Notes: a model not told the origin generated them from the sequence alone. A stretch of 55,795 nt of DNA from Perkinsus chesapeaki ATCC PRA-425 (GCA_013115145.1 JAAPAO010000190.1:1-55795), one strand, 5' to 3'; shown: positions 10,107-51,000, numbered from the stretch's first letter. A program made the numbers and translations.

Positions 10107-13100
10107 TCAAGCAACATTATCTCGTTCATGACTCATTGAAGCTTCAACTTTAGTCTTCATCAACTCAATCTTTAACGCTGATATCTCTCTAGCATAAGTT
10201 CGGGAATTGCTGAGCAGCTCAGCTTCCAGACTCTGAATGGTGGTCGGACCGTGCCCTCGAGGAAAGCATCTCAGTTTATCACCTCTATGCGGGACTTCAT
10301 CATCTTGTTTCTCTCAGCGAACTCATCTCTCGTTCGCTCAAGTTGTGCAATCTCAGAACGCAGCTCCATCGAGCTACCGAATTCAGCAATCTACACACAG
10401 CAATACCGCGATCCGCGCTTTTGGACAAGTTGAAGCTGGAGGGCGATCCCGTACCTTTCCAGCGGTCATTTTTTCACGATTCTCTTCGCTTCGTATGGCG
10501 TTGAGTAACTCTTTTATCTCCTTGTCTTTAGCCCTGATCATTTCCCTATTATTTTCATTCTCTCTCCTTTGCTCTTCGGCCTTTACTTTCTGCCTATATC
10601 GAACTGTATCGCTGCATGGGTAACGACCTCACTTATTCTTGAGATCGCTTATTTCAGAGTTGAGCATGTCATTAGCAGCTTTCAGTCGAGTGAGCTCGCT
10701 CAGTATACCGGAAGACTTGCTCGTCTTCTTCACGGACCTCTCAAGTAGCTGCAAGCATCGTCCGCAAGACACGCTATGCACACAGTGACACACCAATTCC
10801 AGTTTGCTGATTATCTTTTCTTGTGACTTGATAGTTGCCTCGAACTTTGGCAGCTTCGCAGCCCTTTCCTGGAGATGTTGGTGTTGTTTTGCCAGACTAA
10901 CCTGTCATTCAAATCGACTGATTGAGTGTGCTGTCCTCCGCTACATGTGCGCGTTCCAATTCCTCTAGTCGGTGCCGGTCGGCTTGTGCTCGTGCTAGCT
11001 CCTCGCTAGCCCCCTTCAGTCGCCTTCGCAGCTCGTCCACTGCTGCCCTCTCAGTGCGATATCTAAGACCGCCACCTCATTGCACTCTTGTGTGCTACTG
11101 GACAAACTTGTTAAGGGTTTCCTGGAGTCTCGCTACAATCTGAGTGCTAGACAGGTTGCTCAAAGCCGCCTCTAGAACGGGGTCTGCCGAGTTGCCTGAT
11201 AACGGTTGCGGTTGGGCTGCGTATCTTGGTACGTGATTACCCGCGCCCGCCGTCGCCTCGTCCCACATATTTTTCTCTTCGTCTATTCTGCTACGTAGTT
11301 CTTCATTCTCCTGCTTAACCGCTTGGAGTTGTTTAGCAAGACTGCTAACTTCAGCTTTTGCTTGTTCAAGGGATTCGGCCTGAGCTCAGGAGGATTCGAT
11401 CGGGCTCATGACCATAAAAACAATGTGCCCTTACGCGTCTTGTATATTCTTTCGCTAAGTGTGCGTTGACCTGTTCTCGGTCCCTCGCGATTGCCAACAC
11501 GGTCTCGACTGTATCATCACTAGGCCGTGCAGGGCCACGGTTCGTTCCTTTGACTTCTAAGGGTTATGATAAGCAAGAAGGCGTACGCTGCACCACGTTC
11601 ATCAGAGTGTCCAACATCATCAATACTCCCTGCAGCACCCATCGGCCAGGTGCGCAAGTCGACCTCTAGAGCTGCTGTGAGATGTGGTGCTACTAGAGGC
11701 TTGAACTCGACGTGCTGAGATTCTGGCTATTGGACTGCGAAGATGTGCTATGATACTCACACATGATTTCACCCCTCCTGGTGGACTGTCACCTTTCCTT
11801 GGCAACTTTACATTACCAACAGCAACAGGATGGAATTCAGGAACGGCCGAGGTTCCCGATGATGGTATGCTTTCCGGGGCAAGCAACTACTGATCAAGTT
11901 GCCGAGCCATACAGAAGTGATTGTACGTGTAAGGTGAGACTCCTTGTCGAAGACGGGATTAACAACCTCATCACAGAGCTGAACGCCTAGAGGGGCAGAA
12001 GCTGGCATTAGCATGTTTCTTACCCTCGCCAACTTGGTGCTATCGAAGTTCCAATAGACCCAGGTGTGATACAGACAAGTGGCGCGGCGGTGCCGGCCAG
12101 TCGTAGATCAGCAACGTTCTCTTTAAGAAACCTGAATTGATACGCTTGTTCCAGCAATAGATATGTTATTGTCACATTGTGAGCGATTGTGACTGATCAT
12201 AGAAGAATGCTTGGAAGGACGGTTGAGGAGTTCCCCCTTCACCATTAGGATAGGTCGCCAAAATGGCCGCAGTAATTGCGTCTGGTAGACTACGAGAGAA
12301 TAGGAACCGATGAATCTGAGCCAATCGTTCCAGCTAAATGGAGTGTTACGTGACCTTCATCTCGAGCAACAGCTGTTCATTGCCCTCCTTAAGGTTAGTC
12401 AGAGGAGCTTCGTAAGCAACCGTGAAGCTCAGCTCTGCCTGAACAGCAAGTGACAAGAGGCAACCAGTGGTGTTCTTTACATGCGAGCCTTTGCCGTTCC
12501 CACGGTAACCGGAACGTGCCAGTATATGAGCCTGCAAAGGGCAGGCGTGGTGTGGCTCTGTGGGCGTGGGGAGGTTTTAATGAGATCTTACCTGTGAGAA
12601 TGGATCCAGCACCGACGGCTTGAAAGTTAGGTTCAAGAGCTCTCGTGAGGAGTTTTTCGTTTGTAACTGAATTGAGAATCTTTTAACCTGATCGACGGTG
12701 ACATACCAGTAAGGAGAACTGAACTGTAGTGTCCTCTACCTTGCGAGGCCGGCAGATCGGTAGAACCTATACTTTCATCACGATAAACTTACGACTAAGC
12801 ATAGCCTCACCAGCTCCTCATTGATATCACAACTACCCTCCCAATCGTCTACTGTACATCTCAGAGTTGAGCAAGAATACAGGACAGCCCCGTCAGTTGT
12901 CCTCAATAGCTTAGCTAGTATCACACAGCTCGCAAGATTATCCTTGGAAGCTGACAGGATGAAGAGTTCGTCCGCAATGGTATGACTTTAGCGTACACGA
13001 GTTCAATCCCCGGACGCGGTGAAATATGAAACGAATTCTTCCTTCACTTTGGACATCAGCTCGGGTCTCCGCTAAAGAGAAGGAACTCTCAGTCCGACTA

Positions 13101-14432: not shown

Positions 14433-15423
14433 CACGATGCAGCAGCTACAGGAGGCTCCTCTTCAGGGGCGGCGGTCACGGTCTGAAAAACGCTAGGTTT
14501 TCTAAAGTATGACCCATACCTTACTGTATTAGGTTTGTCTTTCCCCTTTAACTTATACACTAAGTTGATAAGCTCTTCCTTAGCTGCATCATTACTCGCC
14601 GGTGGTGTCCGTCTATAATAGCATTCTATATGCTAAAGAAAAGAACAACAACACTTGAATCGAAGCTTGGAGGCTTTCATGCTTACTGATCTGGCTAGCA
14701 TCCGTCTCAACTGCCATTGGAATATCTTATTATTGTAACATCGATACTCTTCCTCTATGCCATTTTCAGGGTCGTCGTCTTGAAGCACTCTATCCATATA
14801 TTTCTGACCCACGATCAATGACCAGAAATAATACCAAACTTCCCCTACATCGCACTGTGATACCTCCTCTTCAGACGCCTCATCACCCGAGCTCTCCGAT
14901 GGCGAAGGACTCTCTGCTGACGGAGCATACGGTGACCTCGTAGAAGCGTCCGCCTATCAGAATACCGTTGGCCCGGTAGGTTCTCTCTCGATCAACCTAC
15001 AGCTTGATGCAGCATTCGCAGCATTCTCTCGACATGTCTCGGTACTCCAGGAGCGTGACGTGCCCTCTTGACCGGCGGATGCGCTGGTGATTCTGATGGA
15101 CGGAGACGGTCAAGCGAGGAGGAACAACGTTCCCTACCGCTCATTTCTTCAGCGCTCTTCCTCTTGTTGTTGATCGAAACATCGACCGAAGGTGTAGGAG
15201 ATGTTCCCTCGTCTGGTGAAGGTGACACCGCCACCACAGACGGGCTGCCGTTTTCTTTGTGATCCTCAACAGCTAACAAGCGTGTTGGTGGCGGCCAGGG
15301 TGTTCCAAAACGTTCTCTGTGAGTAGAGTGAAGGAACGGACCGCATACTTCCTGAAAGAAGTGTGTGAAAATCATATGGTTATAACCAGATGCATTCTCA
15401 GGCCGGCGGTTCGACTGAAGCAA
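14432..15423 (-). CDS. Hypothetical multi-exon protein with Ser/Pro-rich and acidic segments; start uncertain
   Basis: ORF 14992-15423 plus spliced exons ADASTRSPYAPSAESPSPSESSGDEASEEE, KYMDRVLQDDDPENGIEEEYRCYNNKIFQWQLRRML, HIECYYRRTPP..KDKPNT, TVTAAPEEEPPVAAAS*. Confidence 0.5.
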
Positions 15424-15793: not shown

Positions 15794-15806
15794 GCATCAT
15801 TGGTCT
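15794..15806 (+). tRNA. 5' fragment of tRNA-Gly(GCC) (GCATCATTGGTCT), separated from the rest by an insertion
   Basis: GCATCAT is the exact complement of the acceptor 3' strand ATGATGC at 18099-18105; TTGGTCT is repeated at 18042-18048. Confidence 0.88.
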
Positions 15807-15863
15807 GGTGGTCGAACCCACCTTTGCCATCCCCTTAAGGGGGGGGAGAATCCTTAAAGGAGT

Positions 15864-15953
15864 GCCATTCTGGCCATTCTGAAGGCCATTCTGAAGGCCA
15901 TTCTGAAGGCCATTCTGAAGGCCATTCTGAAGGCCATTCTGAAGGCCATTCTG
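15864..15953. repeat. 12-bp tandem repeat (GGCCATTCTGAA), 6 full copies plus partial copies
   Basis: Full units start at 15872, 15884, 15896, 15908, 15920, 15932; partial at 15944. Confidence 0.97.
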
Positions 15954-16018
15954 GCCTTCGGCCGCGGCTACGCCGCGGCCCTAGAATTGTAAGAACAGCT
16001 GACGGCACCCTTCGCCAT

Positions 16019-17825
16019 ATGAGGGGGACTAACTTCAATGAAGCCAAACACGCGTGCTTACAAAGAGACTTCAGCTCCATTACCAGAGCTTCCGCTTTTA
16101 TCTTTGACTGTAGAATGTTGTGGCGGTTCATATTCTCGAACAGGAGGTTATTTAATCGTGTCGGTGGTACGGACGGTTTCAACTTTGGTGATATTCCGAT
16201 ACCGTATTCATTAAACGAGGTAAGAGGTCGTCTCGAGTATGAATGTCAAGATATCAAGCTCAGTGAAGAGGGAGCTATTTTTGGTCACGAATACCTAAAA
16301 CTCTTGGACTCCAATCGCTATGATGAAATATGCAGCGAGTGGCTGGCCGAGGAAAAACGGTCTAGTGAGCTCCCGGCTTGCGGTACGCCATCAACGGACG
16401 ACGAAGGTGTTGCCATTCCTGACGACAGTGTGGAGGCCACGGTAATGCGGGTGCTTTCTGGAGAGCTCGACTGTGATTTCTTCGAAGATGAAATTGAAGA
16501 CCAGTCAAGCCGAGACGCGGCGTTCAAATCGATATCTGAGAGCGGAAGGCCCAAGAGAAAATTTTGCCGCCTCAAAGGCCTCCATTCCACACCGAGCATT
16601 ATCAAGTTGGACAAGTGGAGTGACCTTGTGAGAGGTGTGGTTCGAGAACTCATAGCCTCAGCTCCACAGGGTAATGCTACTGCTGAAGCCGTTTACAAGG
16701 AGTATCTAAGAAAGACCCTAGATGAGACCGACCAGGCGCTGCGAAGCGGCCGAAAGCCGCTACCACTACATCCGATTGGCCTCGATTGTATCAAGACGTA
16801 CATGAAGAAGCTTAACAGTTGTCGAGCTGGTTCGATAACCCCAACAGTTCGGGGTCTCGAAATTATGGCCGGATTGTCTGAGGCACTGCAAAATCCGTCG
16901 AGCCTGACCTTTAATGAACCTCCTCCTGTAGAGATACAAACGAATGGCGTCCTCATATCCTCTGGTCCTCTTCCGGTATCTGCTGCGGATATAGCCGCAG
17001 AATTGATGTGCAGCGAATTGGAGAGGGCTGCAGGGGACAGCCAAAGAGTGACTCCATGTCAAAGAGAAGACAATGATATTGGGATAGGTCAACCATTAGA
17101 GTCACCACCGGCGGAGTCGCAACCACCAAACCGTGGCCATCTCCCCCAAACTGACAACCGGGTGGTTTCAGAAAAGAATACACAGATGGCTTGCCGTTTC
17201 TGCCAAAAACCTCTCGCTAGAGGATTCAACAACCACGACCACAGCCAGAAAGAGTACGGTAAATATGGCCGGTGCCCTCTTGATACTCGGCCCGCTAAAC
17301 CGACAAACATTAAGGAGCTCACTGAGAGGGCTCGCCATGCTGCGCTTGGTGTCACTGTGGGAGGAAACACCGGCATTCGTAAGTGTAATTTCTGTGATCT
17401 GCCTCTGGTCGGCCACTTCATCACTTCCGCGGGCGTCCTGATGAGGCAGCATGAAGTCTTCGCCGATGAGGATGGCCACCTTTTGAGGTTATGGACTTTT
17501 AAGGTTATTTCGACGTACTTCATCTTCTAGGTACTGCCCGTTTGCCGAGAACATTGATAAGGGGCGACTGACCCAACTCGACGACCTTAAACAGCGCAGG
17601 ATTCGGGAGAAGCTGGACCGGAAAAGAGCTGGAAAGCGGCAGCGCTATGCGGAGAAGGTAGAGGCCAAACGGAAAGTCAAATACGGTCGGACACAGCTGG
17701 AGAGCTCTAGCTCCAGCTCACAAGTAGTAATCCGACGATTTCAGTTGTTCAACGACTTCTGGACAGGTTCATCTCACTGGAGGGTAGTTGCAGGAAATTT
17801 GCAGGAAACCGATAAAAGCTCATGA
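16019..17825 (+). CDS. Transposase-like protein, C-terminal portion only; two exons (intron 17488-17530)
   Basis: Begins RGTNFNEAKHACLQRDFSS, resembling the helix carrying the last catalytic Glu of IS256/Mutator-like DDE transposases. Two Cys/His motifs: CRFCQKP..HDH..GRCP and CNFCDLP..QH..R/YCPF (the second completed by splicing). Basic tail, stop TGA 17823-17825. No upstream D..D region is visible. Confidence 0.7.
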
Positions 17826-17904
17826 TGTGCATGCTGTATCCATGTAACTAGCTGTTATTGCGTTTTTGTGTATGGTATGGAGGAGTACACACATCAGTTC
17901 CTTC

Positions 17905-18040
17905 CTCTTTCCTCTCTTTTTTCCTTTTTTTCCTCTTTTTTCCTCCTTTTTTCTTCTTTTTTCTCCTTTTTTCTTCTTTTTCCCCTTTTTTCCCTCTTTT
18001 TTTTTCTTCCCCCCTTCTTTTCTCGATTTCTCCCCCAGCC
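17905..18040. other. T/C-only low-complexity tract, possibly a low-quality read end
   Basis: Aperiodic pyrimidine run of about 135 nt with almost no purines. Confidence 0.7.
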
Positions 18041-18041
18041 C

Positions 18042-18106
18042 TTGGTCTAGTGGTAGAATACAACGTTGCCATCGTTGTGACCCGAGTTCGATTCTCGGAT
18101 GATGCA
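18042..18106 (+). tRNA. 3' portion of the interrupted tRNA-Gly(GCC)
   Basis: A box TGGTCTAGTGG; anticodon arm CAACG-TTGCCAT-CGTTG; T arm CCGAG-TTCGATT-CTCGG; acceptor strand ATGATGC plus A; TTTT at 18111-18114. The 7 bases upstream (CAGCCCT) do not pair with the acceptor strand. Confidence 0.92.
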
Positions 18107-18354
18107 GTGGTTTTCTCTGAGCACACATTGTGTGCTCTGTCCCCTCCGATCACTATCCTTCTGGAGGATCTATAATCGTGTCGAATGTCCCACGAACGCC
18201 ATCAAGACACTCGTTAATACATTCAAAAGACATCAGAAAGGAACACTAGCTATTCCTCCCGATAGCGCTGCATCATAACAAGGTGAATCGGGAAGCTACA
18301 TAGGATGCGTAAACCCTGGGTGCTAGACATGTGAGGATGGAATTTGGAAGCCCC

Positions 18355-24423: not shown

Positions 24424-27097
24424 ATGGTTACCCCTCGAACGTCGTTACTCCTCCTTCGAGGGCCCGCTCTGAAGGACTCCCGAGGAGCACGTGCCTTCAC
24501 CTCCGGGTTGAGTAGTGGTATGCTCGCCTATACCCCTCCCCCAGAAATCCCCGCTAAGGAGCCTGTTAAGCAACAGCCTGAGGGAGGCCTTCGTAACCTT
24601 ATGGGGTTTGGATCGAATCATGCTGGGCCCGCACAGTGAGTAGAAGGGTATAGCTGCTCTGTAGGGAAACGTTTCAGATCCACAAGCTTCGATCGGGTGA
24701 ACTCCTTCCATCGATTCGGCCTCGATAAGGAGCTCCTTATTGGCCTCCACAGCACCGGGGCTGTCACACCGACAAGGACGCAGGTAGCCCTTAACTCAGG
24801 TGCAGAGGGATTGCTTTGCGTTACTTAGGAAGTCTGTATACCGGCCATGATGGAAGGTCAATCCCTCCTGTTGGTGGCGCAGACTGGCTCTGGCAAGACC
24901 ATGGCCTATGTGCTTCCTCTTCTCCATCGCTTGTTGAGGTCGAATCCCGATAATTTATATCCGTTGGAGAACAAACCACGCGCTATCATTATGGTGCCTA
25001 CTCGAGAGCTTGCAATACAGGTAAAGAGCCTCCTAAACCGCCTGGGAGGATTTCACCGTTTATAGGTTATAAAGGTAGTTAGGCAACTGACCACTCAAGG
25101 TTGTCGCCAAATTACTAGTACTGGCTTGGCAGCGGGACTTAGTTACGTGAAAGAAGCACGAGCTCTTAATCAAGCCAGAGTGAACAAGTCTTCGGTGTAA
25201 GAGTCTTACTAGTTGTTTTTTTCAGGCGGATGTGGTGGTATGCACACCTGCGAGGTTGTTGTTGCATTTAATGAAGGGGAACGTCAAGCTTGGCGAAGTT
25301 ACCCATATTGTGGTAAGGTTGTGGTGTTACCTCCGCCGATGAGTGGAATTTTTCGTCTGACAGCGTGTCCGAGTGGTTAAGGAGGTGGACTAGAAATCCA
25401 CTGGGCTCTGCCCGCGCAGGTTCGAATCCTGCCGCTGTCGATTTTCATCCATTTCAAATGCGCGTTTTCTTGTCCAGATCGATGAAGCCGATACGTTGTG
25501 CGACACCTTCTATGAGAAGGAAGTTGCTGATGTTCTCTCAAAGACGTTCAAGGCCCGGGGAGCTGCTCGCTCGGCACCGCTGGTAACACCATATTGCCGC
25601 ACGAGTTTTCACTCGTACTCTGCAGGTGGCGTTCGTTGGCGCTACACGTACCGGCGCGGTGAGCAATTTCGTCAGAACATCCGTCCCTAGTCATATTGTC
25701 GTGAACCAAGTCGTAGCCCCTGATGCCCACATGACAGTGCCAGCCTTGGAACAAGTGACATTCCCTTCACTGCACTCTATCGATTGAAGTCTGCAGGTGT
25801 TTGTCCCAATGGGTGGCCGAAAAAGATCGAACGCGTTGGTTGACATACTAGAAGAGCGGCAAGTTCGAGGACAAAAAGTGATGATGCGTACGCTAGTGAT
25901 GTTATATGTCCTTTTGTTGCAGACGCTCATCTTCACCAACACTGTATCGCGATGTAGAGGGGTGGCAAGAATGCTCGAGACGGAAGGGTACAACGTCAGC
26001 TTGCTCCACGGAGAGATGGCATTTAAGAATCGAAGGAAGGAATTTGCCTCTTTCAAAGGCGCATCCAAAACGGGCGCTCCAGCCAAAGAGATCATGGTCA
26101 TCTTGACACGCTACATACCTTGCATTGTACTCAACAGGTGTGCACAAACCTTGCGAGCAGAGGCTTGGACTTCGACGATGTCGGGCATGTCGTTATGTAT
26201 GACTTTCCCTACACGCTCGCTGATTACATTCACCGAGTGGGCAGAACAGCGAGAGCAGGTTGGCTATCGAAGTAGGGTCGAAGAGGACGCGGCTGCTGTG
26301 CCAGGACGGGCGGGAAGGGTTACAACACTGTTCCGGAAAAAGGATCTCCCGGTTGTTCGGAAGATCCAGGAGGCCAGTCGAGCCTCGAGACCTCTAGACG
26401 TCCGCTTTGCCTCGAAGAGCATAAAGAAAATATTGAAGCTGGAAAAGCTGAAACAGGATTTGGAGGTGAGGAAGCTTATCATGGATCCAGATGGGCATCT
26501 GTGGTTCTCAGACAAAGAAAGTGAAACTGAAGAAGAAGAGTGCGTACGACTGGTATTTGGCGCGTCGAAAGAAGATGGGCCTGCCGCCGAGAGATAACCT
26601 CTGTGGGCCGGCTAAGCGGGCAGTTATACAGGAATGGCGGAAACGATATCGAATGGATAAGAAGGTTACACTGCCTGTACTCGGATTGGACCACTTGCCG
26701 TGTCCTTCAGTTGGTCGAGCTTGTTAGCAGAGGTCGTTTGAAGAAGGGAGAAGTCCTACCAACCATGCCCAACCAGAACGTCACTCGTAGCGACTCTCAG
26801 GTGAGAGATCAATCTGGACCAGTAAAGTTAGCACCTATTTGTTCAGGAGCAATCGGTTCTCAAGCGGGACTCTGACACTGGCGCAATGCTCAGGGTCAAT
26901 GTACGTCGCAGTGAAAGGCTACTGGCTAAAAAGGGCATTCTTAAAGAAAGAGACGACGACGATGGGCATGTTGAGATCAGGGATGTTCAACTTGGTAGGG
27001 CTTCGCCACTATAATGTACTTAGTTGCCGTATCAGGTGACAATATTATACTGCCGAAGAAGGAGCGAAGCAAGCGTGAAAATCGTATGGTGTTTTGA
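24424..27097 (+). CDS. DEAD-box RNA helicase, organellar type (DDX28/RH39-like), multi-exon
   Basis: Q motif [48 protein letters not shown], motif III as [36 protein letters not shown]-terminus [28 protein letters not shown] looks like a mitochondrial presequence. Subfamily is inferred. Confidence 0.9.
25359..25440 (+). tRNA. tRNA-Ser(AGA), intact, 82 nt, inside a helicase intron
   Basis: Acceptor GACAGCG/CGCTGTC; anticodon arm GTGGA-CTAGAAA-TCCAC; long variable arm; T arm GCAGG-TTCGAAT-CCTGC; TTTT just downstream. Confidence 0.97.
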
Positions 27098-42000: not shown

Positions 42001-45000
42001 CTCTATGCAAATAACGAGCACACTTTGGACGAATGTCACACAGTTTACTTACGTGAAATCTCCTGAAATTGAGAGTGTTAGTCCGGCTGAAGGACACTCT
42101 AATGGCGGAACTCGTGTTACTATTTATGGCAAAGGTAGCTCCATTTTCAAAGTATCGACAGACGCGTGCGTGTCATTGACAGGATTCAATTTATTCGATC
42201 CGGAAGTGTTGGGGTCGTCGGACATGCGCATCTCCTGCGTGTTCGGCAGAACGGCGGTTGCAGCTCACTACATATCACCAACCGAGCTCTACTGCTACTC
42301 GCCACCGAGCACATTTAGTGATACCCAATCGGGTGAGCCTTTGAATCTCCCATGATTGGGGTTTCGGTCTCGGCCCCTTAATCAGGTCATTATGTCAATT
42401 TGGACCTCACACTGGCACATGAACCTTCACATCCTAGTCTCCGTGTTCCCAGTGTATCACTGGTGCCTCTCTATCAGCAACTATTTTATTATCGAGGGGC
42501 TCGCTTCTCGGTAACCTACGCAAGCCCGTTATCTGGACCGCGAACAGGCGGCACACGTATGTCGATCTACTCGGACGAGCCTTTCCTGAATACCGGTCTT
42601 CTGCGATGTGCCTTTGGGAAACAGTTGGTGCCCGCACAATGGGTGTCCCCTTTTCGAATTGACTGCAGCAGCCCATCTGTAAACTCCCCAGGAGCTGTTA
42701 AATTTGGGCTTTCCTCGGACAACCAAACTATTACTCCACTCACGGTTGTCGATCCTACATCGAAGCTGCCTGTTGAACTACAATTTACTTACTACATAGG
42801 TGCCACCGTAGCATCTGTATCACCATCGTTTGGTGGTACTGATGGTGGGACCGTTGTTTTACTGCAGGGCTCACACTTTGCGGACTACTCTGACCTCTCC
42901 TGCAGATTCGGGACAACCGTTGTGCCGGTTTTGAGGTTTATATCATCAAGCGCTATCTTATGCAAGAGCCCCGCTCATCAGATGGGAGCTATCGTCGTAG
43001 GAGTGGCGAATAATGGCCAAGACTTTACCGGAGGAGCAGGTGTGATTGCGATTCTCTCTGTTCATTCGCTGTTCGGTGGTGGCCTCACTTGCTTTTGCTT
43101 GCATCATGCAGCTCATTGATTCCCCAGGGTCACTTCTACTCTGTGTTTCTAGAATGCTCTCTCAGGTACTGTTTACACATACATCAATTCCAAGCCTGCT
43201 TTTATCATTACTCCCTTCCTTGGTCCCATATCTGGTAACACTCGCGTCACTGTGCGCGCCTCTGATACCGATACTATTCCGCCACACATTTGGCGAGCAG
43301 CCTCAAGCAGCAGTTACTGCAGCTTTGGTACACTTAAAGCTGAAGCTCTAGTGGACGATGCTACTGCAACCCTCTACTGTATATCACCCAAAACCACGGA
43401 ACCCGGTGAAGTAACTCTCTTAATATCGCTTAATGGTCAGGACACTGCCGCCGCCACGCAAAAATACTATTACTATGCTCCTCCGTTTATCAGTCTAGTA
43501 GAGCCTCCGATGGGGCCGCAGGGTCAGAGTACTTTCATAACTCTTACAGGCGGCAACTTTTACAATACCGATATGCTAACGGTGAAGTTTGGCGGGGTCT
43601 CCTCCAACAATGAAGATTCTACAGTTGCACTCAGACGAGCTATTTGGCTGAGTAATTCTCAACTTCAAGTAGAGAGCCCCGATCTTGCGCCTGGTGGGCA
43701 ACTGAGGGTGCCCCTATACGTGTCGAATAATGACCAAAACTTCTCCCCAGAGGGTATAGGATACTGGGACGCCGATGACGACAGCCACGACGAGGCGAAA
43801 TCGCTCAGGTTAGGAGTCAAGCTCATCTGTGTCAGGGGTGTCTCTTAGTGTCTTCCCAGATACTACACGTTTCACTTGCCAATTATTATAAAGGGCGTAT
43901 ATCCCCAAGAGGGCAATATGCATGGTGGTGGATTGATCTCAGTTCACGGCGGGCCATTTATTGCGACGGCAGAACTTCTGTGCTCCTTCGATTGGGTCTA
44001 TATCGACCGTACGGTTGCTAGGCCGGTGGTCGTATCACCTACGCAACTCCTTTGCCCAGTCCCAGATATGTGGGATGCTAGGTCAGCCAATGCTTTAAAT
44101 AGAGAAGCCAGAGTGCGCATTACCCTCAATGGTATCGACTGGAGCCTAACTGATGCGCTGTTTACCTTCAAAAGCATGAGCCCACCAGGCTACTTCACCC
44201 ATCATTTAGAACAATCAATATTCACCTCCCAAATTCGGCCATGTCCCTCTGGGCACATGTGCGAAGAGACTGGCCTCAGCCAACCCATGCCGTGCCCGCC
44301 AGGAACGTATCAGCCTAGAGGTGGCAGCAGACAGTGCCTGGATTGCCCCATGGGATACTACTGCCCAACCGCAAGAATGGAGAAGGCCGTAGTTTGCCCT
44401 GCCGGTTGGATTTGTGATGAGGAAGGCCTCGTGAGTCCATACAAGCGATGCCCTGCGGGCTTCATGTGTCAACCTGGAACAGCTGCGGGATCGGCTACAC
44501 CTGTCCAGACTATATTCCTCGAGTCCAACAACCCTACAATATACACTGCCGGTTTTAATGCACCAAAACTTTGCCCTAGGGGGCTGCACTGCTATGCTGG
44601 CACTTCGACACTTCGTTCCTCGCCGGGGAACTTAAGCACTCCCCAACCCTGCTTTCAGGGTTTTTTCTGTCCGCCAGGTAGCAGCAAACCCTACGGGGCA
44701 GGTGCGTGCCCACCGGGTAAATACTGCCCGGTTCCGCGCTCGGCCGGTATCACCTGCCCGTCCCGTTTCAAGTGCGGACCCATGCCGGGCCAGTTCGAGC
44801 CAACAAAATGCCCTGCCGGCAGCTATAATCCCTACCATGGTCAACATAACTGTACATTGTGTAATGAGGGCGGTATTTGCCCTGTGCCCATGATGGAGCG
44901 ACCTAAACCTGCAGAGTGTGGATACGTTGCAGCCAGAAAGGGTATAAAGGTTCATTCTGGGAATGACCTATGTCCTGCTGGGAGGGTATGTGGTTGGGGT

Positions 45001-48000
45001 GTAGCATCGGTTACTGAGCCCAAGATATGCTCTGTGGTGGAAGCAAGCTCGATAGGTAATATGTCCTTCCCTGAGGATTCTTGCCTGCCCGAGCTTGGTG
45101 AGGCATATGTGACAAGGGAACGAGCCCGCTTGCTCTTGACTGGCGGTGATGTAGCCAACCGACTCAACAACTCATTAGGATTATGCTGCTGGACATCCGG
45201 GAAAGTTCTGCAGTTTCTGAGCGGGATTGCATCACACTTTGAAAACCTTCAAGTGCCCCTGTTGGATGAGGCACGTGCGGCGTGGACACTAGTGCACAAG
45301 GTTAGATCTCTCAACGAGAGGGAAACAGCGTTGGATAGCTCAGCCACAGGCTTTGATGGTCTTGCAATGCTTCTTAACTTCACTGATGACTCTCTACGTC
45401 TGTCGTGGGAACTGCATTTGTCTCGGGTGCGGCGCAGGATACTCCTCGACATTGCGCGACGGTTCTATTTCAACACCCCTAAACCTTGTCCGAAGGGGTC
45501 CTTCTGCAACACTGGGACATGTGAAGACCTTATGGTCGTTGTTTCGGACTCGGGTCAAACATCGTCTGGGAGACGAAGGCTTGAGGCTGTGGTCGAAGAC
45601 GCAGACGGTATAACGCGGAGGAAGGCACTGGCGGATACCGATATTGCATATTTCAATATGCCTAAAGCAGACATCGTTCGCATGTCAGATGACGACCAAC
45701 AATTTGTCATGATTCAACTTGGTGCTCAAAGGCCCAGGGTCCTCACGTCCGCTGACAGTATGCGCCGTACCCGATTGTTGCAAACTACAGGCTCGGAAGA
45801 GGTCCAGCGGGTGACATTGCCACCGAACCACCCTCTAGCACTCCGTGCCCCGCAGCAATGCCTAGCGGGCACCTACTGTAATGCCCGGGCTAACTCAAGT
45901 CTGGGGACGGGTTTATGCCCAACAGGAATGTACTGCTCCTCGGGCGCATCTGAGCCCGCACCAGCACCCGAGGGCGAGTTTGTCGGCGAAACAGGACGTG
46001 TCAGGGGACGTATGTGCACACCTGGGAAGTTTGCACCGCAGCCCAGCTCCCCAATTTGCTACCCATGTCCTCCAGGCTATAGCTGCCCAGATTTTGGGAC
46101 TCGGACTCCCTTCATATGTTCGCGGGGCACTTTCCGACTTTCGTCTGGTGGAGAAGCTGGTTCGGCTTTTGACGACGAAACGCCAGTTGTGGTAGATGAG
46201 TCTGGGGGGTCTTCATCTGGCAGCATCTCGTGTAGCCCCTGTGTAGCGGGTACATGGTCTGCTTTACGAGGGACTGAGGACGAGACTGGTTGTGATCCAT
46301 GCCCAGCTGGACGATTCTGCCTTGCTAAAACGGGCAATTTGAGTGAAACGAATCCTTGCCCGGAAGGAAATATCTGCGGTGAAGGGACGACTTTGGAAAC
46401 GGCCTCGAAGGTGCTATGTTTTGATGGCTTCTTTTGTGGCCCGGGTACAAGTCCTACTTCGGTCTATCAATCACTCTGCTTGAAAGAGTTCTACTGCCCT
46501 CAAGGAACAACCTTCGCCAACAGGTACAACTTCCGTTGCCCTACAGGATTTTATTGTCCTGCGGGTACAGGCTGGAAGCCCGATATGGATGTGCCACTCC
46601 GACCAAATTCGGCCTACTTGAAGTACATTCACTTTCATATACTACAAGTTGTTGGGCAGTACTGCCTTCGCCAGCTACATGCCGCTGAGTATAACTACAT
46701 CCAGTACACTAATGACGCACGGCGACGAAGCGGCCTCGCAGAAGAAATGCCGAGGTCAGAGGTACAAGTGCGTTTGTCTAAATGGACTACTTCAATGTTA
46801 AACTGCGTACACTCTCAAATAGAGTACATACCGCTTTTAGCCGATGGGGTGGAGGGTGTCACCAAAGAGCTATTCGATGAAGAAACGTGGCACAGTGAGA
46901 GCATACTCACACTACAGCCCTGGAAGCTCGCACATGAGTACTCTAATAAGTGCCTCAACGACACATATCCTAGGGTCAGAAGCGGTTCCACTTGGGACTG
47001 TCTCTGCACGAGCGAGCCAGCTGGAGGTGAACTAATGAAATGCCTGACAAGCTCGGTTGATCCTTACGAGGAACCACACGGCGCGCCTTTCCGATACGAT
47101 GGTGATGGAGAGCTCACCAGTTCATCCTGTTCTCCTTGGCCAGACTGTATCGATTGGAGTAGAGTATCTCAAGATAATATTGGTGGCTCCGCCGGGCCAG
47201 AAGGCGGTCCTTTCTGGGATGATTTTGATCGACTTGCCGTCCCTTTTATTGACTACGTACGAGCAGCTCTGGAGAGGGAGATGAAGAGAACCGCCCTTGC
47301 GGTTGACGAGGCTGGTCGTAGTCAGCAAAGCCGGACCAGATGCCCATTTGGGACCCTCACATCAGAGGACGCAGAGTCCGAGCTTGAGCTCTGCGTGAAA
47401 CGCAAGTCGATTGTTCACCTCGAGGATAATGCCGACATTGTTATATCTCGCATTAATCCAGTAGCAATGGCCAACGTAGACTCCGTACCAAGACCGATAC
47501 CACCCTCTATGCAGGGAAAGATCATACCAGTCATAGACGACGAGGACGAGAGAGTAGTGTACAGTCTTCCAGCTCGAGGAAGCGCTGTAATAACACTTGA
47601 CCTCCGCCACCTCCCTTTCGGGGTTGAGTATGGGAGAGATTGGCGTATGCGCATCGTCGCCAATGACACTCTTCCGCATGATTTCGACGACTCGCAAGTA
47701 TGTGAAAATATATGGGCACGATGGTATCTGGACAAGGAGCTGTATTATGGTAGTTTGGCAGATGTCCGGGAGGATGATCTTCGAGAACACAACTGCACAG
47801 CACTGCAGATGCCCATTGCATTAGAGAAGTTTATGATGGCTTCTGGCAGTCTATGTCCAAGCTCTACTGATCCACTATGTCTGGGCTTTGGCTTTACCCA
47901 GTCGATTTCGACAGCTGTCTGCAGTAGCGGGGGTCCAGGCCAGAGTCCCACAGGGCAGCCTAAGGTTATCGAGTTACAGCTGCACGCCCTGGTGGATATT

Positions 48001-51000
48001 CAATTTCGAGTTGAAGTCCAGATGCTCAACGGTATGACAATGGCCGACCGATTCAACTTTATACAAACAGCCTCGGTAGAGATACTCCAGCCTGCCAGAA
48101 ATGTCCTGAATACATCAAACGCATTCGTCATAGAACTCCGACATGATAGCCAAGTAGCCCTACCATTCAACACACCACTAGCGTCACCCGACAGAAAAAC
48201 CAATGACCTAGACGTTAAATACAGTGACCTTGCAAAACAATCCAGTATATCTGGCGCAACAGCTATCTCGCAGCGCGGTGTATTAAATAAAGCTTTTCTG
48301 TCGTGGTTGCCTCGAGACCAGAGTCTGACCAACTGTATGAGGCATCCAGCTGACTATGACGAGTATCTGTGGGCTGGGCAATACTTCACGAATATCCGAA
48401 AGACTGTGTGGATGTCTCACATACCGTTTTTCTCCAATTGTCGTGGTTTTGGTCGAGCTATCCCATTATGGCAAGTGGTAGAGCATGGCGAAAAGTGCCG
48501 TATTGTGGACGAACAAGATACAGTGGGAAATGGGGGCACTGCTCCTGGGCTTCACTAGCTCTTGATAGGTAGCAATTGATCGATTGAGCTTCGGCGCTTT
48601 AGCCAGTGGTGATTACTGTGGGCCAAGTGACGACGGCTCGACCTCCCCTGTACGGCTTACATGCATTATCGATGAGAAGCCTAATGAGAAGCTACTGCTG
48701 CCACGCTGGTTTGAGGGCCAATCCGGTATTTGATTAATTACAATTTTATGTCCGATATCTCGCCCCTCGTAGGATCTATCCTATTTTATATATCACGCCG
48801 AGCCCTCACATCTATAGAATATGCGTCGATTGGGGAGCCTATGCCTGTGAGCCTTCCGAACCAAACAGATCTGAAACGTTCAAGTCTTAGGATGCCATTC
48901 CGATTGTTTTGACTCGCGGTGCAACTTCGGATGGGAAACTGATGAGAAGCGTTAAGCTCGACCTTAAATACTGGCAGAGAACTTCGAAAGAGAAGGTCCT
49001 CTGCACTGAATTGCCAAAGTCGGTGGTCTCAAGAGTTTCACAGGTGCTTATCAAAGGAGAAGTGGAATTCTCGAAATTCGAGACGCCTACTGCGCAACAA
49101 TTGAGTGGAGAGGCGTTGTGGGAGTATACATTGGAAATTAATTGGGAAGGAATGAGCCATATCGGGGTAAGCGTGGACACATACCGTGGCATCGGTCCCA
49201 CAGTGAAGCCGGAAGCCTTCCTAAAGCCAGCACGTGGTTTATAATGTTAGTATGCAGGTTATGAATAGCTTCGCCTTCCCTTGGGACTTCTATCTCATCT
49301 CTTTCACCGCTACATCATTCCTTCTGTTATCGGTCATGCTATTATTCTGGGGGTATAACTGGACATTCAGCCTCATCAAGTTCCCACCGAAGGTGCAGGC
49401 CTGAACCTCGGCTGACCACAATTCTCTCCCTTCAGATAACCGACTCGCGGTATATCCGTTTAATCTGCAAGCCTGTTGTCAAGGGAGCTGTCCTAGCTAT
49501 ACTGCCGTGCGCGCCCACTCTCATGCTCCTTATCATGTTTGTTCGCGGTACCATCGGAGACTTCTCACTTCCTTTCTTCGAATGCGCCGAGGGAACCTCA
49601 ATAGAAAACTGCGCAATTGGCATATTCGACAACTTTTTGACCAGCTGGAATGGAGAGACCCGTGTACCTTTTGAGCACATCGCCATACAAGAGTTATTAT
49701 CCTGTTAGGTTACCGAAACAACAGCGCAGCAAAGACGTCGCGCCAGGTCGGGTGTGGCGCTTTTGACAGTGGGAGCGTACATTGCCGTGCAAAGCGTCAA
49801 GGTAAGCCGTCTACACGCTGGCATGCTAAAGCGGATAACGCGTTAGGCCTTCCTTCCAGCCGCAGAGTCAAAGTTTTATGCTACCGGGAATAATGGTGGA
49901 GGTAGGATAATGAGACCTGTCTCACTGGAAGCTAATCTCACCGATAGATTATCACGGCCTATTGTAGGAAGATGTCAGGTATTGACGCACTGGAAAATAT
50001 TGATGAAGAAAGTGAGGATGACGAGGGGAATGAAGGGAGAATGAAGGAAGAGATAGCTGATGACAGCGAACTTCGTAGGCAATAAGTTGACATTCACATA
50101 ACTGGCCTGTGTAATATCACTTGAACTGTCAGCATCCGACGAACCAATCTTCATACCTCACATATGGAAGAGAACATGCTTCGCTCTAATCCTATTTGGC
50201 ATGGCTGTGGTTGCACTTATTCTTCTGCAGTTCTCATTCTCCCAGCTGTTCATGGATAACCTCTGGTTAATGCTGCTCGGCTTATATCTATTCGGTGAGC
50301 TTCTATGTGAGCACCAGAGTCAGGCTCACGCTGGATGCCCTCAGGAATAATTAGCGAAGTTATCCTCAACACTTTCGTGGCAGAAAGGCTCCTTCTGGTG
50401 CCTGCGGTTAACGTAGTCAGGCTTCTGTCGTCTCTGGCCATGCTTGCGAGTAAAGACTTCTTCACATTTATACTAACGCAGTTCGTGGTAAGGATTGTTC
50501 TGGCATGCACTCGGGAGACCCGTGCCTGGGAGTGTAAACCATTGTATTCAGGTTTTGGCTATACAGACTGTGGATCGCATGTACATATCTCCAAACAAGG
50601 CCTGGCTGCTGAGTCAGGCATACAACATAGCGGTTTCGACGGTAAATGCGATAAAGTGGGTCCTTAAGGGCGGTGACGAGAGCGATGTTCAAGCAAAGAT
50701 ACGCTCTACTATGGGTGGTAAGCCTACGATGCCGTTAGCATCGTCTCTGAGTTCGTGCTCAGGTGGGGGCTCACAGGAGGAGGATGACCTGATAGATGCT
50801 CTGGGAAACCCTATTAAGTCTGACGAAGGCATCGGTATGATATCGGGATTTAATATCGATGACGAAGGTGTGGTGGATGAGCCGATCGAACAATACGACA
50901 CCCGGGTGGAGGATATGATAGGATTCTTAGCCGGGTGAGTATAGCCTTTGTTATGCTATGACCGGTATCACAGAATCTGTGATACCGGTAGCATACAGGT

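What the first reader, a model, noticed from the sequence alone, without database searches (positions are those of the whole stretch)
15794..18106. tRNA-Gly gene split by a site-specific DNA transposon (Dada-like) with a 7-bp target-site duplication
Seen: GCATCATTGGTCT at 15794-15806 and TTGGTCTAGTGG...ATGATGCA at 18042-18106. Removing 15807-18048 restores a 71-nt tRNA-Gly(GCC) with a perfect GCATCAT/ATGATGC acceptor stem. The duplicated TTGGTCT overlaps the A box, and the insert encodes a transposase-like ORF. Known: Dada elements are DDE transposons distantly related to MuDR/IS256 that target tRNA and snRNA genes with 6-7 bp TSDs; I recall Perkinsus tRNA-targeting families, including a tRNA-Gly one, from Kojima and Jurka 2013 (recalled, needs checking). 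Inference: this is such an element, which uses multicopy tRNA genes as low-cost landing sites. The superfamily is described, but this copy would be missed by ORF or tRNA scans.
Basis: partly seen in the sequence, partly recalled or inferred. Interest (0 to 1): 0.9.

Follow-up and report, generated by a model that had tools for sequence, protein, structure and literature searches.

The report
Truncated Dada transposon splitting tRNA-Gly
A 2.2-kb, internally deleted copy of a Dada "jumping gene" sits at a fixed position inside a glycine tRNA gene of the shellfish parasite Perkinsus chesapeaki; tRNA-targeting Dada elements are already described in the sister species P. marinus, so it is real but largely expected.

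Summary
Window 15794-15806 and 18042-18106 are the two parts of a tRNA-Gly(GCC) gene. Removing 15807-18048 gives a 71-nt tRNA that ARAGORN calls.

The Dada reading also holds:
- The 503-aa ORF, plus a second exon after a 43-nt intron, is the C-terminal ~55% of a Dada transposase. Its P. marinus relative is nearly identical to Dada-tG_PMar in Kojima & Jurka's own alignment.
- A 3' terminus (CT-rich tract, then TTTTCTCGATTT..CCCAGCC) recurs in seven related Perkinsus elements. Each is joined to nucleotide 7 of a tRNA.
- Three complete elements show a 7-bp duplication of tRNA nucleotides 7-13.

- This copy is non-autonomous. About 1.6-2.1 kb, carrying both catalytic aspartates, the DxxH motif and the N-terminal zinc finger, is deleted.
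- It is single-copy at 80% identity or above.
- The junction repeat is really 32 nt at 81%. The element's 5' end imitates tRNA nucleotides 14-38 of its own target (19/25).

It is a new member of a known kind. First-stage notes of this scan already list Dada-like elements in other tRNA genes of this genome. The target-matched 5' mimic is the only part that may go beyond the literature.

The parts
15794..15806 (+). 5' fragment of the tRNA-Gly(GCC) gene (nt 1-13). Its last 7 nt (15800-15806, TTGGTCT) are the left copy of the target-site duplication.
   Evidence: canonical GCATCA|TTGGTCT seen in other genomic copies
15807..18041 (+). Internally deleted (non-autonomous) Dada DNA transposon, 2235 bp, without terminal inverted repeats
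   Evidence: termini 6/30 identical in inverted register; single-copy depth
15807..15831 (+). Element 5' terminus: GGTGGTC heptamer shared with L009, followed by an imitation of tRNA-Gly(GCC) nt 14-38 (19/25 identical, anticodon loop 8/8)
15872..15953 (+). Tandem array of 6.8 copies of the 12-mer GGCCATTCTGAA inside the 5' non-coding region
   Evidence: raised word depth fits the array alone
15960..15980 (+). GC-rich perfect hairpin (9-bp stem, 3-nt loop). Longer counterparts lie at a similar place in the 5' regions of L001 and L009.
   Evidence: z -3.7; L001 -10.7; L009 -6.8
15981..16018 (+). Region holding the internal-deletion junction. In-frame residues ADGTLRH just before the ATG already align with the relatives.
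16019..17487 (+). Exon 1 of the truncated transposase (489 codons + 2 nt). It starts at the RGTNFNE motif that holds the third catalytic residue (E, 16040-16042) and includes the first CCHC zinc finger (17192-17278).
17488..17530 (+). 43-nt GT..AG intron, predicted from homology
   Evidence: exon 2 YCPFAENI aligns to YCPLAENL of relatives, 3e-10; no RNA data available
17531..17826 (+). Exon 2. It completes the second CCHC zinc finger (17384-17540 across the intron) and a basic tail. Stop codon TGA at 17824-17826.
17902..18017 (+). CT-rich low-complexity tract typical of the 3' region of this Perkinsus Dada group
18018..18041 (+). Conserved 3' terminus TTTTCTCGATTT + CTCCCCCAGCCC
   Evidence: same motif in L001, L003, L004, L005, L009; shorter form in L002 minus strand and L006
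18042..18106 (+). 3' part of the tRNA-Gly(GCC) gene (nt 7-71). 18042-18048 is the right copy of the TSD. A and B boxes are intact.
18111..18114 (+). T4 run, the expected Pol III terminator of the tRNA gene
   Evidence: read directly from the sequence

Best explanation
A Dada-superfamily cut-and-paste DNA transposon inserted into a tRNA-Gly(GCC) gene of Perkinsus chesapeaki, in the same orientation as the tRNA. The insertion lies between tRNA nucleotides 13 and 14 and duplicated nucleotides 7-13 (TTGGTCT, overlapping the A box). The copy kept both ends of the element: a 5' region of about 180 bp and the conserved 3' terminus. It lost roughly 1.6-2.1 kb of its interior, which removed the N-terminal zinc finger, both catalytic aspartates and the DxxH motif. 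What remains encodes only the C-terminal ~587 residues, from the catalytic-E motif through two CCHC zinc fingers, so this copy could move only if a related transposase were supplied in trans. Shown here: the split tRNA, the TSD, the protein homology, the conserved termini and the constant insertion position. Inferred: DDE-type staggered cleavage as the origin of the TSD, loss of the interior by abortive gap repair, and recognition of the tRNA A-box/D-arm sequence by the transposase. That recognition would also explain why the element's 5' end looks like the tRNA sequence that normally follows the insertion point.
For: - Excision restores a canonical 71-nt tRNA-Gly(GCC). Other genomic copies read GCATCA|TTGGTCT.
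- phmmer against 1.8 billion representatives gives 18 hits. The eight best clusters, which were looked up, hold only Perkinsus proteins where a source names them (two are unnamed Logan proteins). The ORF aligns to the C-terminal half of 1000-1190-aa proteins.
- P0030 of P. marinus is near-identical to the Dada-tG_PMar entry of Dataset S1 of PMC3706591 and matches the window ORF at 3e-58.
- The full-length relatives carry D1, D2, DxxH and E motifs like Dada-tG_PMar. The window has only the E motif.
- The 3' terminus is conserved, and the junction is at tRNA nt 7 in the window and in L001, L002(-), L003, L004, L005, L006 and L009, across Gly-GCC, Gly-TCC and Ala targets in three named species.
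- Complete elements: L009 has the 7-bp TSD GTGGTGT and L001 has TTGGTC(T/A).
- PMC8869645 states that P. marinus Dada TSDs correspond to tRNA nt 8-13.
- There are no TIRs, as published for Dada.
Against: - This copy lacks two of the three catalytic residues, so Dada membership rests on the remaining protein half and on the termini.
- It is single-copy at 80% DNA identity or above in three DNA runs from two samples, and no autonomous partner was found in this genome.
- Only two other 5' junctions were available for comparison.
- A ~587-codon frame that is still open in a dead copy is somewhat unexpected.
- No transcript evidence exists.
Confidence: 0.9

Rival explanations
1. Domesticated gene: the truncated transposase (E motif plus two CCHC zinc fingers, one intron) is kept by the host or by the transposon family as a functional protein, for example a regulator of Dada transposition, and is not a decaying relic. 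This adds to the transposon origin and does not replace it.
For: An uninterrupted frame of about 587 codons remains despite loss of the catalytic core. The copy is single, with the same depth as its flanks in two samples. The ATG lies directly at the deletion junction.
Against: No RNA run is shown to hold it. No ortholog is available to measure selection. The perfect TSD and perfect tRNA flanks fit a young insertion that has simply had no time to decay. The nearest relative, at 47% identity, sits in an ordinary tRNA-embedded element.
Confidence: 0.08
2. Two independent tRNA-Gly-derived fragments happen to flank an ordinary host gene: a diverged 38-nt 5' half and a copy truncated by 6 nt at its 5' end. 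The 7-bp 'TSD' would be a by-product of both being the same tRNA.
For: This tRNA is present at very high copy number. First-stage notes report tRNA-Gly relics scattered through this genome. The 5' piece continues as tRNA-like sequence to nt 38.
Against: The sequence between the fragments is a Dada transposase fragment. The DNA directly before 18042 is the family's conserved 3' terminus, joined to tRNA nt 7 in seven other loci. The base directly after nt 13 starts the same GGTGGTC heptamer as the complete element L009.
Confidence: 0.02
3. An integrase-type element (tyrosine or serine recombinase) integrated by site-specific recombination, with the 32-nt imperfect repeat acting as an att core, as in prokaryotic tRNA-targeting islands or Crypton-like elements.
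For: The repeat spans 32 nt at 81% identity and covers tRNA nt 7-38. That resembles attL/attR sites more than a short TSD.
Against: No recombinase is encoded. The only protein is of the Dada DDE family. Identity is perfect only over nt 7-13 and drops immediately afterwards. Relatives with other targets share the same 7-bp geometry.
Confidence: 0.01

Closest known systems
Dada-tG_PMar (Perkinsus marinus; Kojima & Jurka 2013, PMC3706591; TSD described in PMC8869645)
   Same: Same superfamily and genus. The transposase C-terminal half is homologous (31% identity, 3e-58). The 3' terminus TTCTCGATTT..CCCCCCACCC is the same (L005). The element inserts at the A box of a tRNA-Gly gene, in the same orientation.
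   Different: The host species differs (P. chesapeaki). The target is a different tRNA-Gly gene family: the GCC type beginning GCATCAT, versus the GCGCCGC.TAGTCT type. The window copy is an internal-deletion derivative of 2.2 kb. The published putative TSD is 6 bp (nt 8-13), whereas the junctions here indicate 7 bp (nt 7-13).
Dada-U6N1_DR (internally deleted derivative of Dada-U6_DR, zebrafish; PMC3706591)
   Same: A non-autonomous Dada that keeps both ends of the parent element, has lost internal sequence, and sits at the family's specific target site.
   Different: It is an animal element that targets U6 snRNA. The parent of the window copy was not found, and the window copy still carries a long open frame.
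tRNA-targeting Dada lineages of fish (Dada-tK, tN, tY, tL and others; PMC8869645)
   Same: Insertion at the orthologous tRNA position (nt 8-13), a 6-7-bp TSD and no TIRs. That paper also concludes that the protein binds mainly downstream of the insertion site.
   Different: The transposases are only distantly related. The fish elements are much larger and contain introns throughout. That paper has no hit for 'mimic', 'termini', 'terminal sequences' or 'sub-terminal', so I found no description of a long target-matched 5' end there.

Membership tests
Dada superfamily of DNA transposons | Coding sequence derived from a Dada transposase gene | tested here: met
   phmmer hits to Perkinsus proteins of 1000-1190 aa. 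P0030 is near-identical to Dada-tG_PMar in Dataset S1. BLASTP of the window ORF against P0030 gives 3e-58.
Dada superfamily of DNA transposons | Insertion at a family-specific site inside a multicopy small RNA gene | tested here: met
   The element splits tRNA-Gly(GCC) at nt 13/14. The tRNA is at very high copy number. Seven related elements are joined at tRNA nt 7.
Dada superfamily of DNA transposons | Target-site duplication of 6-7 bp | tested here: met
   TTGGTCT appears on both sides. L009 has GTGGTGT on both sides. L001 has 6 of 7. The published range is 6-7 bp.
Dada superfamily of DNA transposons | No terminal inverted repeats; sub-terminal sequence related to the target | tested here: met
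   The termini are 6/30 identical in inverted register. The 5' end matches tRNA nt 14-38 at 19/25. The published features are given.
Dada superfamily of DNA transposons | C-terminal CCHC zinc finger | tested here: met
   Two CxxC..H..CP motifs are present (17192-17278, and 17384-17540 across the intron). They align with the relatives and with Dada-tG_PMar.
Dada superfamily of DNA transposons | Termini shared with autonomous relatives (the criterion for calling a deleted copy a family derivative) | tested here: met
   The 3' terminus and CT-rich tract align with L001, L003, L004, L005 and L009. The 5' heptamer GGTGGTC is shared with L009, and the GC hairpin with L001 and L009.
Autonomous Dada element (able to transpose by itself) | Complete DDE triad plus C/DxxH motif | tested here: not met
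   Only the E motif (RGTNFNE, 16022-16042) is present. No D1, D2 or DxxH motif occurs in any frame of the window. These motifs are present in the relatives P0005/21, P0006/22 and L006.
Autonomous Dada element (able to transpose by itself) | N-terminal CCCC zinc finger | tested here: not met
   Homology starts at about residue 590-625 of the full-length relatives. Only 212 bp lie between the 5' end and the ATG.
Integrase-type tRNA-targeting element (tyrosine/serine recombinase, att core) | Encodes a site-specific recombinase | tested here: not met
   Neither the ORF nor seven relatives have a recombinase domain. The protein is of the DDE family.
Non-LTR retrotransposon or SINE next to a tRNA | Reverse transcriptase or retroposed structure with an A-rich 3' tail | tested here: not met
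   No RT is present. The minus-strand A/G-rich tract is the CT-rich 3' region shared by Dada relatives on the coding strand.

The most novel reading that the evidence does not exclude
Perkinsus Dada elements may carry, directly after the TSD, a copy of the tRNA sequence that normally follows the insertion point (nt 14-38), matched to their own target: 19/25 here, 15/25 in the tRNA-Ala element L009, weak in L001. The left junction then looks like an uninterrupted 5' half of the tRNA. If the transposase reads the same motif at the transposon end and in the target, target specificity would be written in the element's own end. A switch between tRNA-Gly(GCC), tRNA-Gly(TCC) and tRNA-Ala could then happen by changing, or gene-converting, that end. 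The literature read here describes only 7-9-bp sub-terminal repeats shared with U6/U1 targets.
Probability: 0.3. Interest if true: 0.55.

Novelty: new member of a known kind. Interest (0 to 1): 0.3.

Why it matters
It extends the published Dada-tG-type elements from P. marinus to P. chesapeaki and P. olseni, and to a second tRNA-Gly gene family. The junctions collected here are cleaner than those in the literature: a 7-bp TSD of tRNA nt 7-13, a conserved 3' terminus, and apparently complete relatives of only 3.7-4.5 kb. This copy is also a concrete example of an unannotated, internally deleted derivative. For genome annotation, the split tRNA and the ORF should both be masked as transposon. 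The only point with wider reach is the target-matched 5' end. If general, it would give a simple handle on how a DDE transposase achieves strict site specificity, which bears on targeted gene delivery.

Tried and rejected
- Pfam on the ORF and on seven relatives gave nothing usable; the only hit was zf-WIZ at E 0.22.
- The word-indexed protein search found nothing, probably because its length window excludes the 1000-aa relatives.
- Self-BLAST of the element against the window found no second copy.
- DNA-level BLAST against the fetched loci aligned only the CT-rich 3' region.
- A TIR search was negative.
- The tRNA-like 5' end does not fold better than shuffled sequence, so no tRNA-like structure is claimed.
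- RNA evidence: the two RNA runs with this species label hold none of the sampled words, and nothing was laid from them. The intron therefore rests on homology only.
- Laying contigs at 80% likeness found no diverged paralog of the interior.
- No empty-site allele was seen (no joint 15806>18049).
- Readings considered and dropped: integrase/att element, retroelement with an A-rich tail on the minus strand, and chance juxtaposition of two tRNA relics (see the rival explanations).
- The L001 5' end is not clearly matched to its own target (12/25, against 13/25 for tRNA-Ala), so the mimicry is not uniform.

Full report
**1. Observation**

After removal of 15807-18048, ARAGORN calls a 71-nt tRNA-Gly(GCC) with a perfect 7-bp acceptor stem. 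On the untouched window ARAGORN reports only tRNA-Ser at 25358-25441. Rfam still scores 18038-18106 as a tRNA at 36.3 bits.

Contigs of public DNA runs of the same organism give very high word depth on 18042-18108. Their loose ends read ...GCATCA directly before TTGGTCT. The reconstructed gene is therefore the canonical multicopy tRNA-Gly(GCC) of this genome. A T4 terminator follows at 18111-18114.

An earlier follow-up note of this scan names the genome Perkinsus chesapeaki. This fits the protein hits: every cluster I looked up that has a source name is from Perkinsus.

**2. What the insert encodes**

The 503-aa ORF (16019-17530) has no usable Pfam hit, and the word-indexed search found nothing. 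The exhaustive phmmer search found 18 relatives. The eight best clusters were looked up: six are P. olseni, P. chesapeaki or P. marinus proteins, and two are unnamed Logan proteins. The ORF aligns to the C-terminal half of proteins of 1000-1190 aa, for example residues 589-921 of the 1057-aa P0001 and 611-1039 of the 1178-aa P0005.

The P. marinus relative P0030 (XP_002779120) is almost letter-for-letter the Dada-tG_PMar entry in Dataset S1 of Kojima & Jurka 2013 (PMC3706591). It matches the window ORF at 3e-58 with 31% identity.

In that published alignment the catalytic motifs of Dada-tG_PMar are:
- SLSIDHTR (D1)
- IFVDRDCC (D2)
- LKLDALH (DxxH)
- VRGSSRSE (E)

Full-length P. olseni relatives carry all four, plus two C-terminal CxxC..H..CP fingers. 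The window ORF begins exactly at the E motif (MRGTNFNE). No D1, D2 or DxxH motif exists in any frame of the window.

The ORF's apparent end is an artefact of a 43-nt GT..AG intron (17488-17530). The next exon, YCPFAENIDKGRL..., aligns with the relatives' YCPLAENL... at 3e-10 and completes the second zinc finger. The encoded product is thus about 587 residues, the C-terminal ~55% of a Dada transposase.

**3. Termini and target**

Ten loci that encode relatives were fetched. Most sit in or next to tRNA genes.

The last ~24 bp of the window insert (TTTTCTCGATTT, then CTCCCCCAGCCC), preceded by a CT-rich tract, recur at the 3' end of the relatives. Every 3' end that abuts a tRNA is joined at tRNA nucleotide 7:

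| Locus | Species | Target tRNA |
|---|---|---|
| L001 | P. olseni | Gly-TCC |
| L004 | P. olseni | Gly-TCC |
| L002 (minus strand) | P. olseni | Gly-TCC |
| L003 | P. chesapeaki | Ala |
| L009 | P. olseni | Ala |
| L005 | P. marinus, the Dada-tG_PMar relative | Gly |
| L006 | Logan contig, species not determined | the same Gly-GCC tRNA as in the window |

L006 also carries D1, D2, DxxH and E motifs. In L005 the junction is ambiguous by one base, because it lies in a run of C.

Two relatives have both junctions:
- L009 is 3669 bp, with the 7-bp TSD GTGGTGT. Its 5' end starts with GGTGGTC, the same heptamer as in the window.
- L001 is about 4.5 kb, with TTGGTC(A) on the left and TTGGTCT on the right.

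All three 5' regions contain a GC-rich perfect hairpin (z -3.7, -10.7 and -6.8). The window therefore keeps genuine 5' and 3' ends. There are no TIRs (6/30 identical), as published for Dada.

The distance from the 5' end to the E motif is 215 bp in the window, 1.8 kb in L009 and 2.3 kb in L001. The window copy has therefore lost about 1.6-2.1 kb.

**4. Comparison with the literature**

PMC3706591 lists Dada-tL, -tIA, -tIB, -tG and -tY of P. marinus, each specific for one tRNA. [quoted passage not shown]

PMC8869645 states that the P. marinus TSDs correspond to tRNA nt 8-13 (TAGTCT followed by AA for Dada-tG_PMar). It also states that the protein probably binds downstream of the insertion site.

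The window element fits all of this. In the junctions collected here, nucleotide 7 (T, T, G in three different targets) is also duplicated, while the element end (..AGCC) stays constant. No paper in the library mentions both Dada and P. chesapeaki.

**5. Copy number and age**

Word depth over the interior equals that of the flanks in three DNA runs from two samples (33.8 vs 36.7/37.1; 77.1 vs 85.7/83.3; 98.4 vs 114.5/97.1). At 80% likeness no further contig covers the interior.

The copy is thus unique, and it shows no empty-site allele in these samples. The perfect TSD and the perfect tRNA flanks suggest a fairly young insertion. That may be enough to explain the still-open reading frame, although domestication cannot be excluded (rival 1). 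No RNA run listed holds the sequence.

**6. The tRNA-like 5' end**

The junction repeat extends to 32 nt at 81% identity. After the TSD, the element reads as an imitation of tRNA-Gly(GCC) nt 14-38: 19/25 identical, with the anticodon loop 8/8.

| Element 5' end | Own target | Other tRNAs tested |
|---|---|---|
| Window | 19/25 (Gly-GCC) | 8/25 (Gly-TCC), 12/25 (Ala) |
| L009 | 15/25 (Ala) | 12/25, 5/25 |
| L001 | 12/25 (Gly-TCC) | 13/25 (Ala), so not clearly matched |

The segment does not fold better than shuffled sequence.

The simplest reading is that the transposase recognises the same A-box/D-arm sequence in the target and at the transposon's 5' end. This extends the published observation on U6/U1 families. 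Gene conversion from the many intact tRNA copies, starting in the identical nt 1-13, is an alternative source of the similarity. With only three 5' junctions this remains an inference.

**7. Verdict**

- Corrections: the copy is an internally deleted, non-autonomous, single-copy derivative. Its target is the GCC-type tRNA-Gly gene family, not the one that flanks the P. marinus Dada-tG_PMar relative (L005).
- It is a new member of a known kind.
- First-stage notes of this scan already flag Dada-like elements in tRNA-Pro, -Asp, -Ala, -Phe and -Ile genes of the same genome. They are unchecked, and none concerns tRNA-Gly.
- Interest is modest. The target-matched 5' mimic is the one feature worth a systematic follow-up.

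Noticed in passing
L002:7054-7090 and L002:12947-12983: Twice in a P. olseni tRNA array, tRNA-Gly(TCC) nt 1-12 (GCACCGTTGGTC) is fused head-to-head to the reverse complement of the 5' end of a tRNA-Val/Ile-type gene (CGACCATTCCAGC...). The fusion lies exactly at the Dada target site and sits next to inverted array segments. It may be a transposase-mediated inversion or an excision rearrangement.
   Followed up: no
window:18042-18108: The tRNA-Gly(GCC) sequence has summed contig word depth of 13,000-57,000, against about 35-115 for single-copy flanks. One 53-nt contig alone is at 11,152 against about 80. This suggests on the order of a hundred or more copies, although the tool warns that summed depth is not a copy number. 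Downstream flanks of other copies share a TGAGCAC motif with this locus.
   Followed up: partly
L007:12900-12985 (same in L008): A Dada relative ends with the usual ..TTTTTTCCACCCAGCC terminus but is followed by non-tRNA sequence. Just inside the end there is a long near-perfect palindrome (CCCCATTTTAAAAATGGGG core) that triggers spurious miRNA-family hits.
   Followed up: no
L009:197-3865 and L001:7611-12109: These apparently complete Perkinsus Dada elements are 3.67 kb and about 4.5 kb long. That is shorter than the 4666-10979 bp range given for complete Dada elements in PMC3706591.
   Followed up: partly
window:15357-15789: In two runs of one sample, a 1002-nt contig at about half the local depth matches 15300-15357 with 5 differences and then jumps to 15789 (skipping 431 bp). 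It could be a diverged allele or a paralog of the upstream flank that reaches the 5' tRNA fragment.
   Followed up: no
window:15872-15983: Contigs from different runs of the same sample skip 35 or 71 bp at the end of the 12-mer array (15947>15983, 15911>15983). This is either length variation or assembly collapse of the GGCCATTCTGAA repeat.
   Followed up: no
window:36019-40116 and 43876-48558: Two long uninterrupted + strand ORFs of 1365 and 1560 aa. The first has an IPT/TIG domain (1.9e-06). The second has only a weak ephrin-receptor-like hit, below the Pfam cut-off. They are probably ordinary host surface or secreted proteins.
   Followed up: partly
L006:5206-7778: A Logan contig from SRR12548988 carries a Dada with D1, D2, DxxH and E motifs. 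Its 3' end abuts a tRNA-Gly(GCC) identical over the 30 nt available to the one in the window. It is only about 31-34% identical in protein to the window copy, so a second, distant Dada lineage uses the same tRNA site. The organism of that run was not determined.
   Followed up: partly
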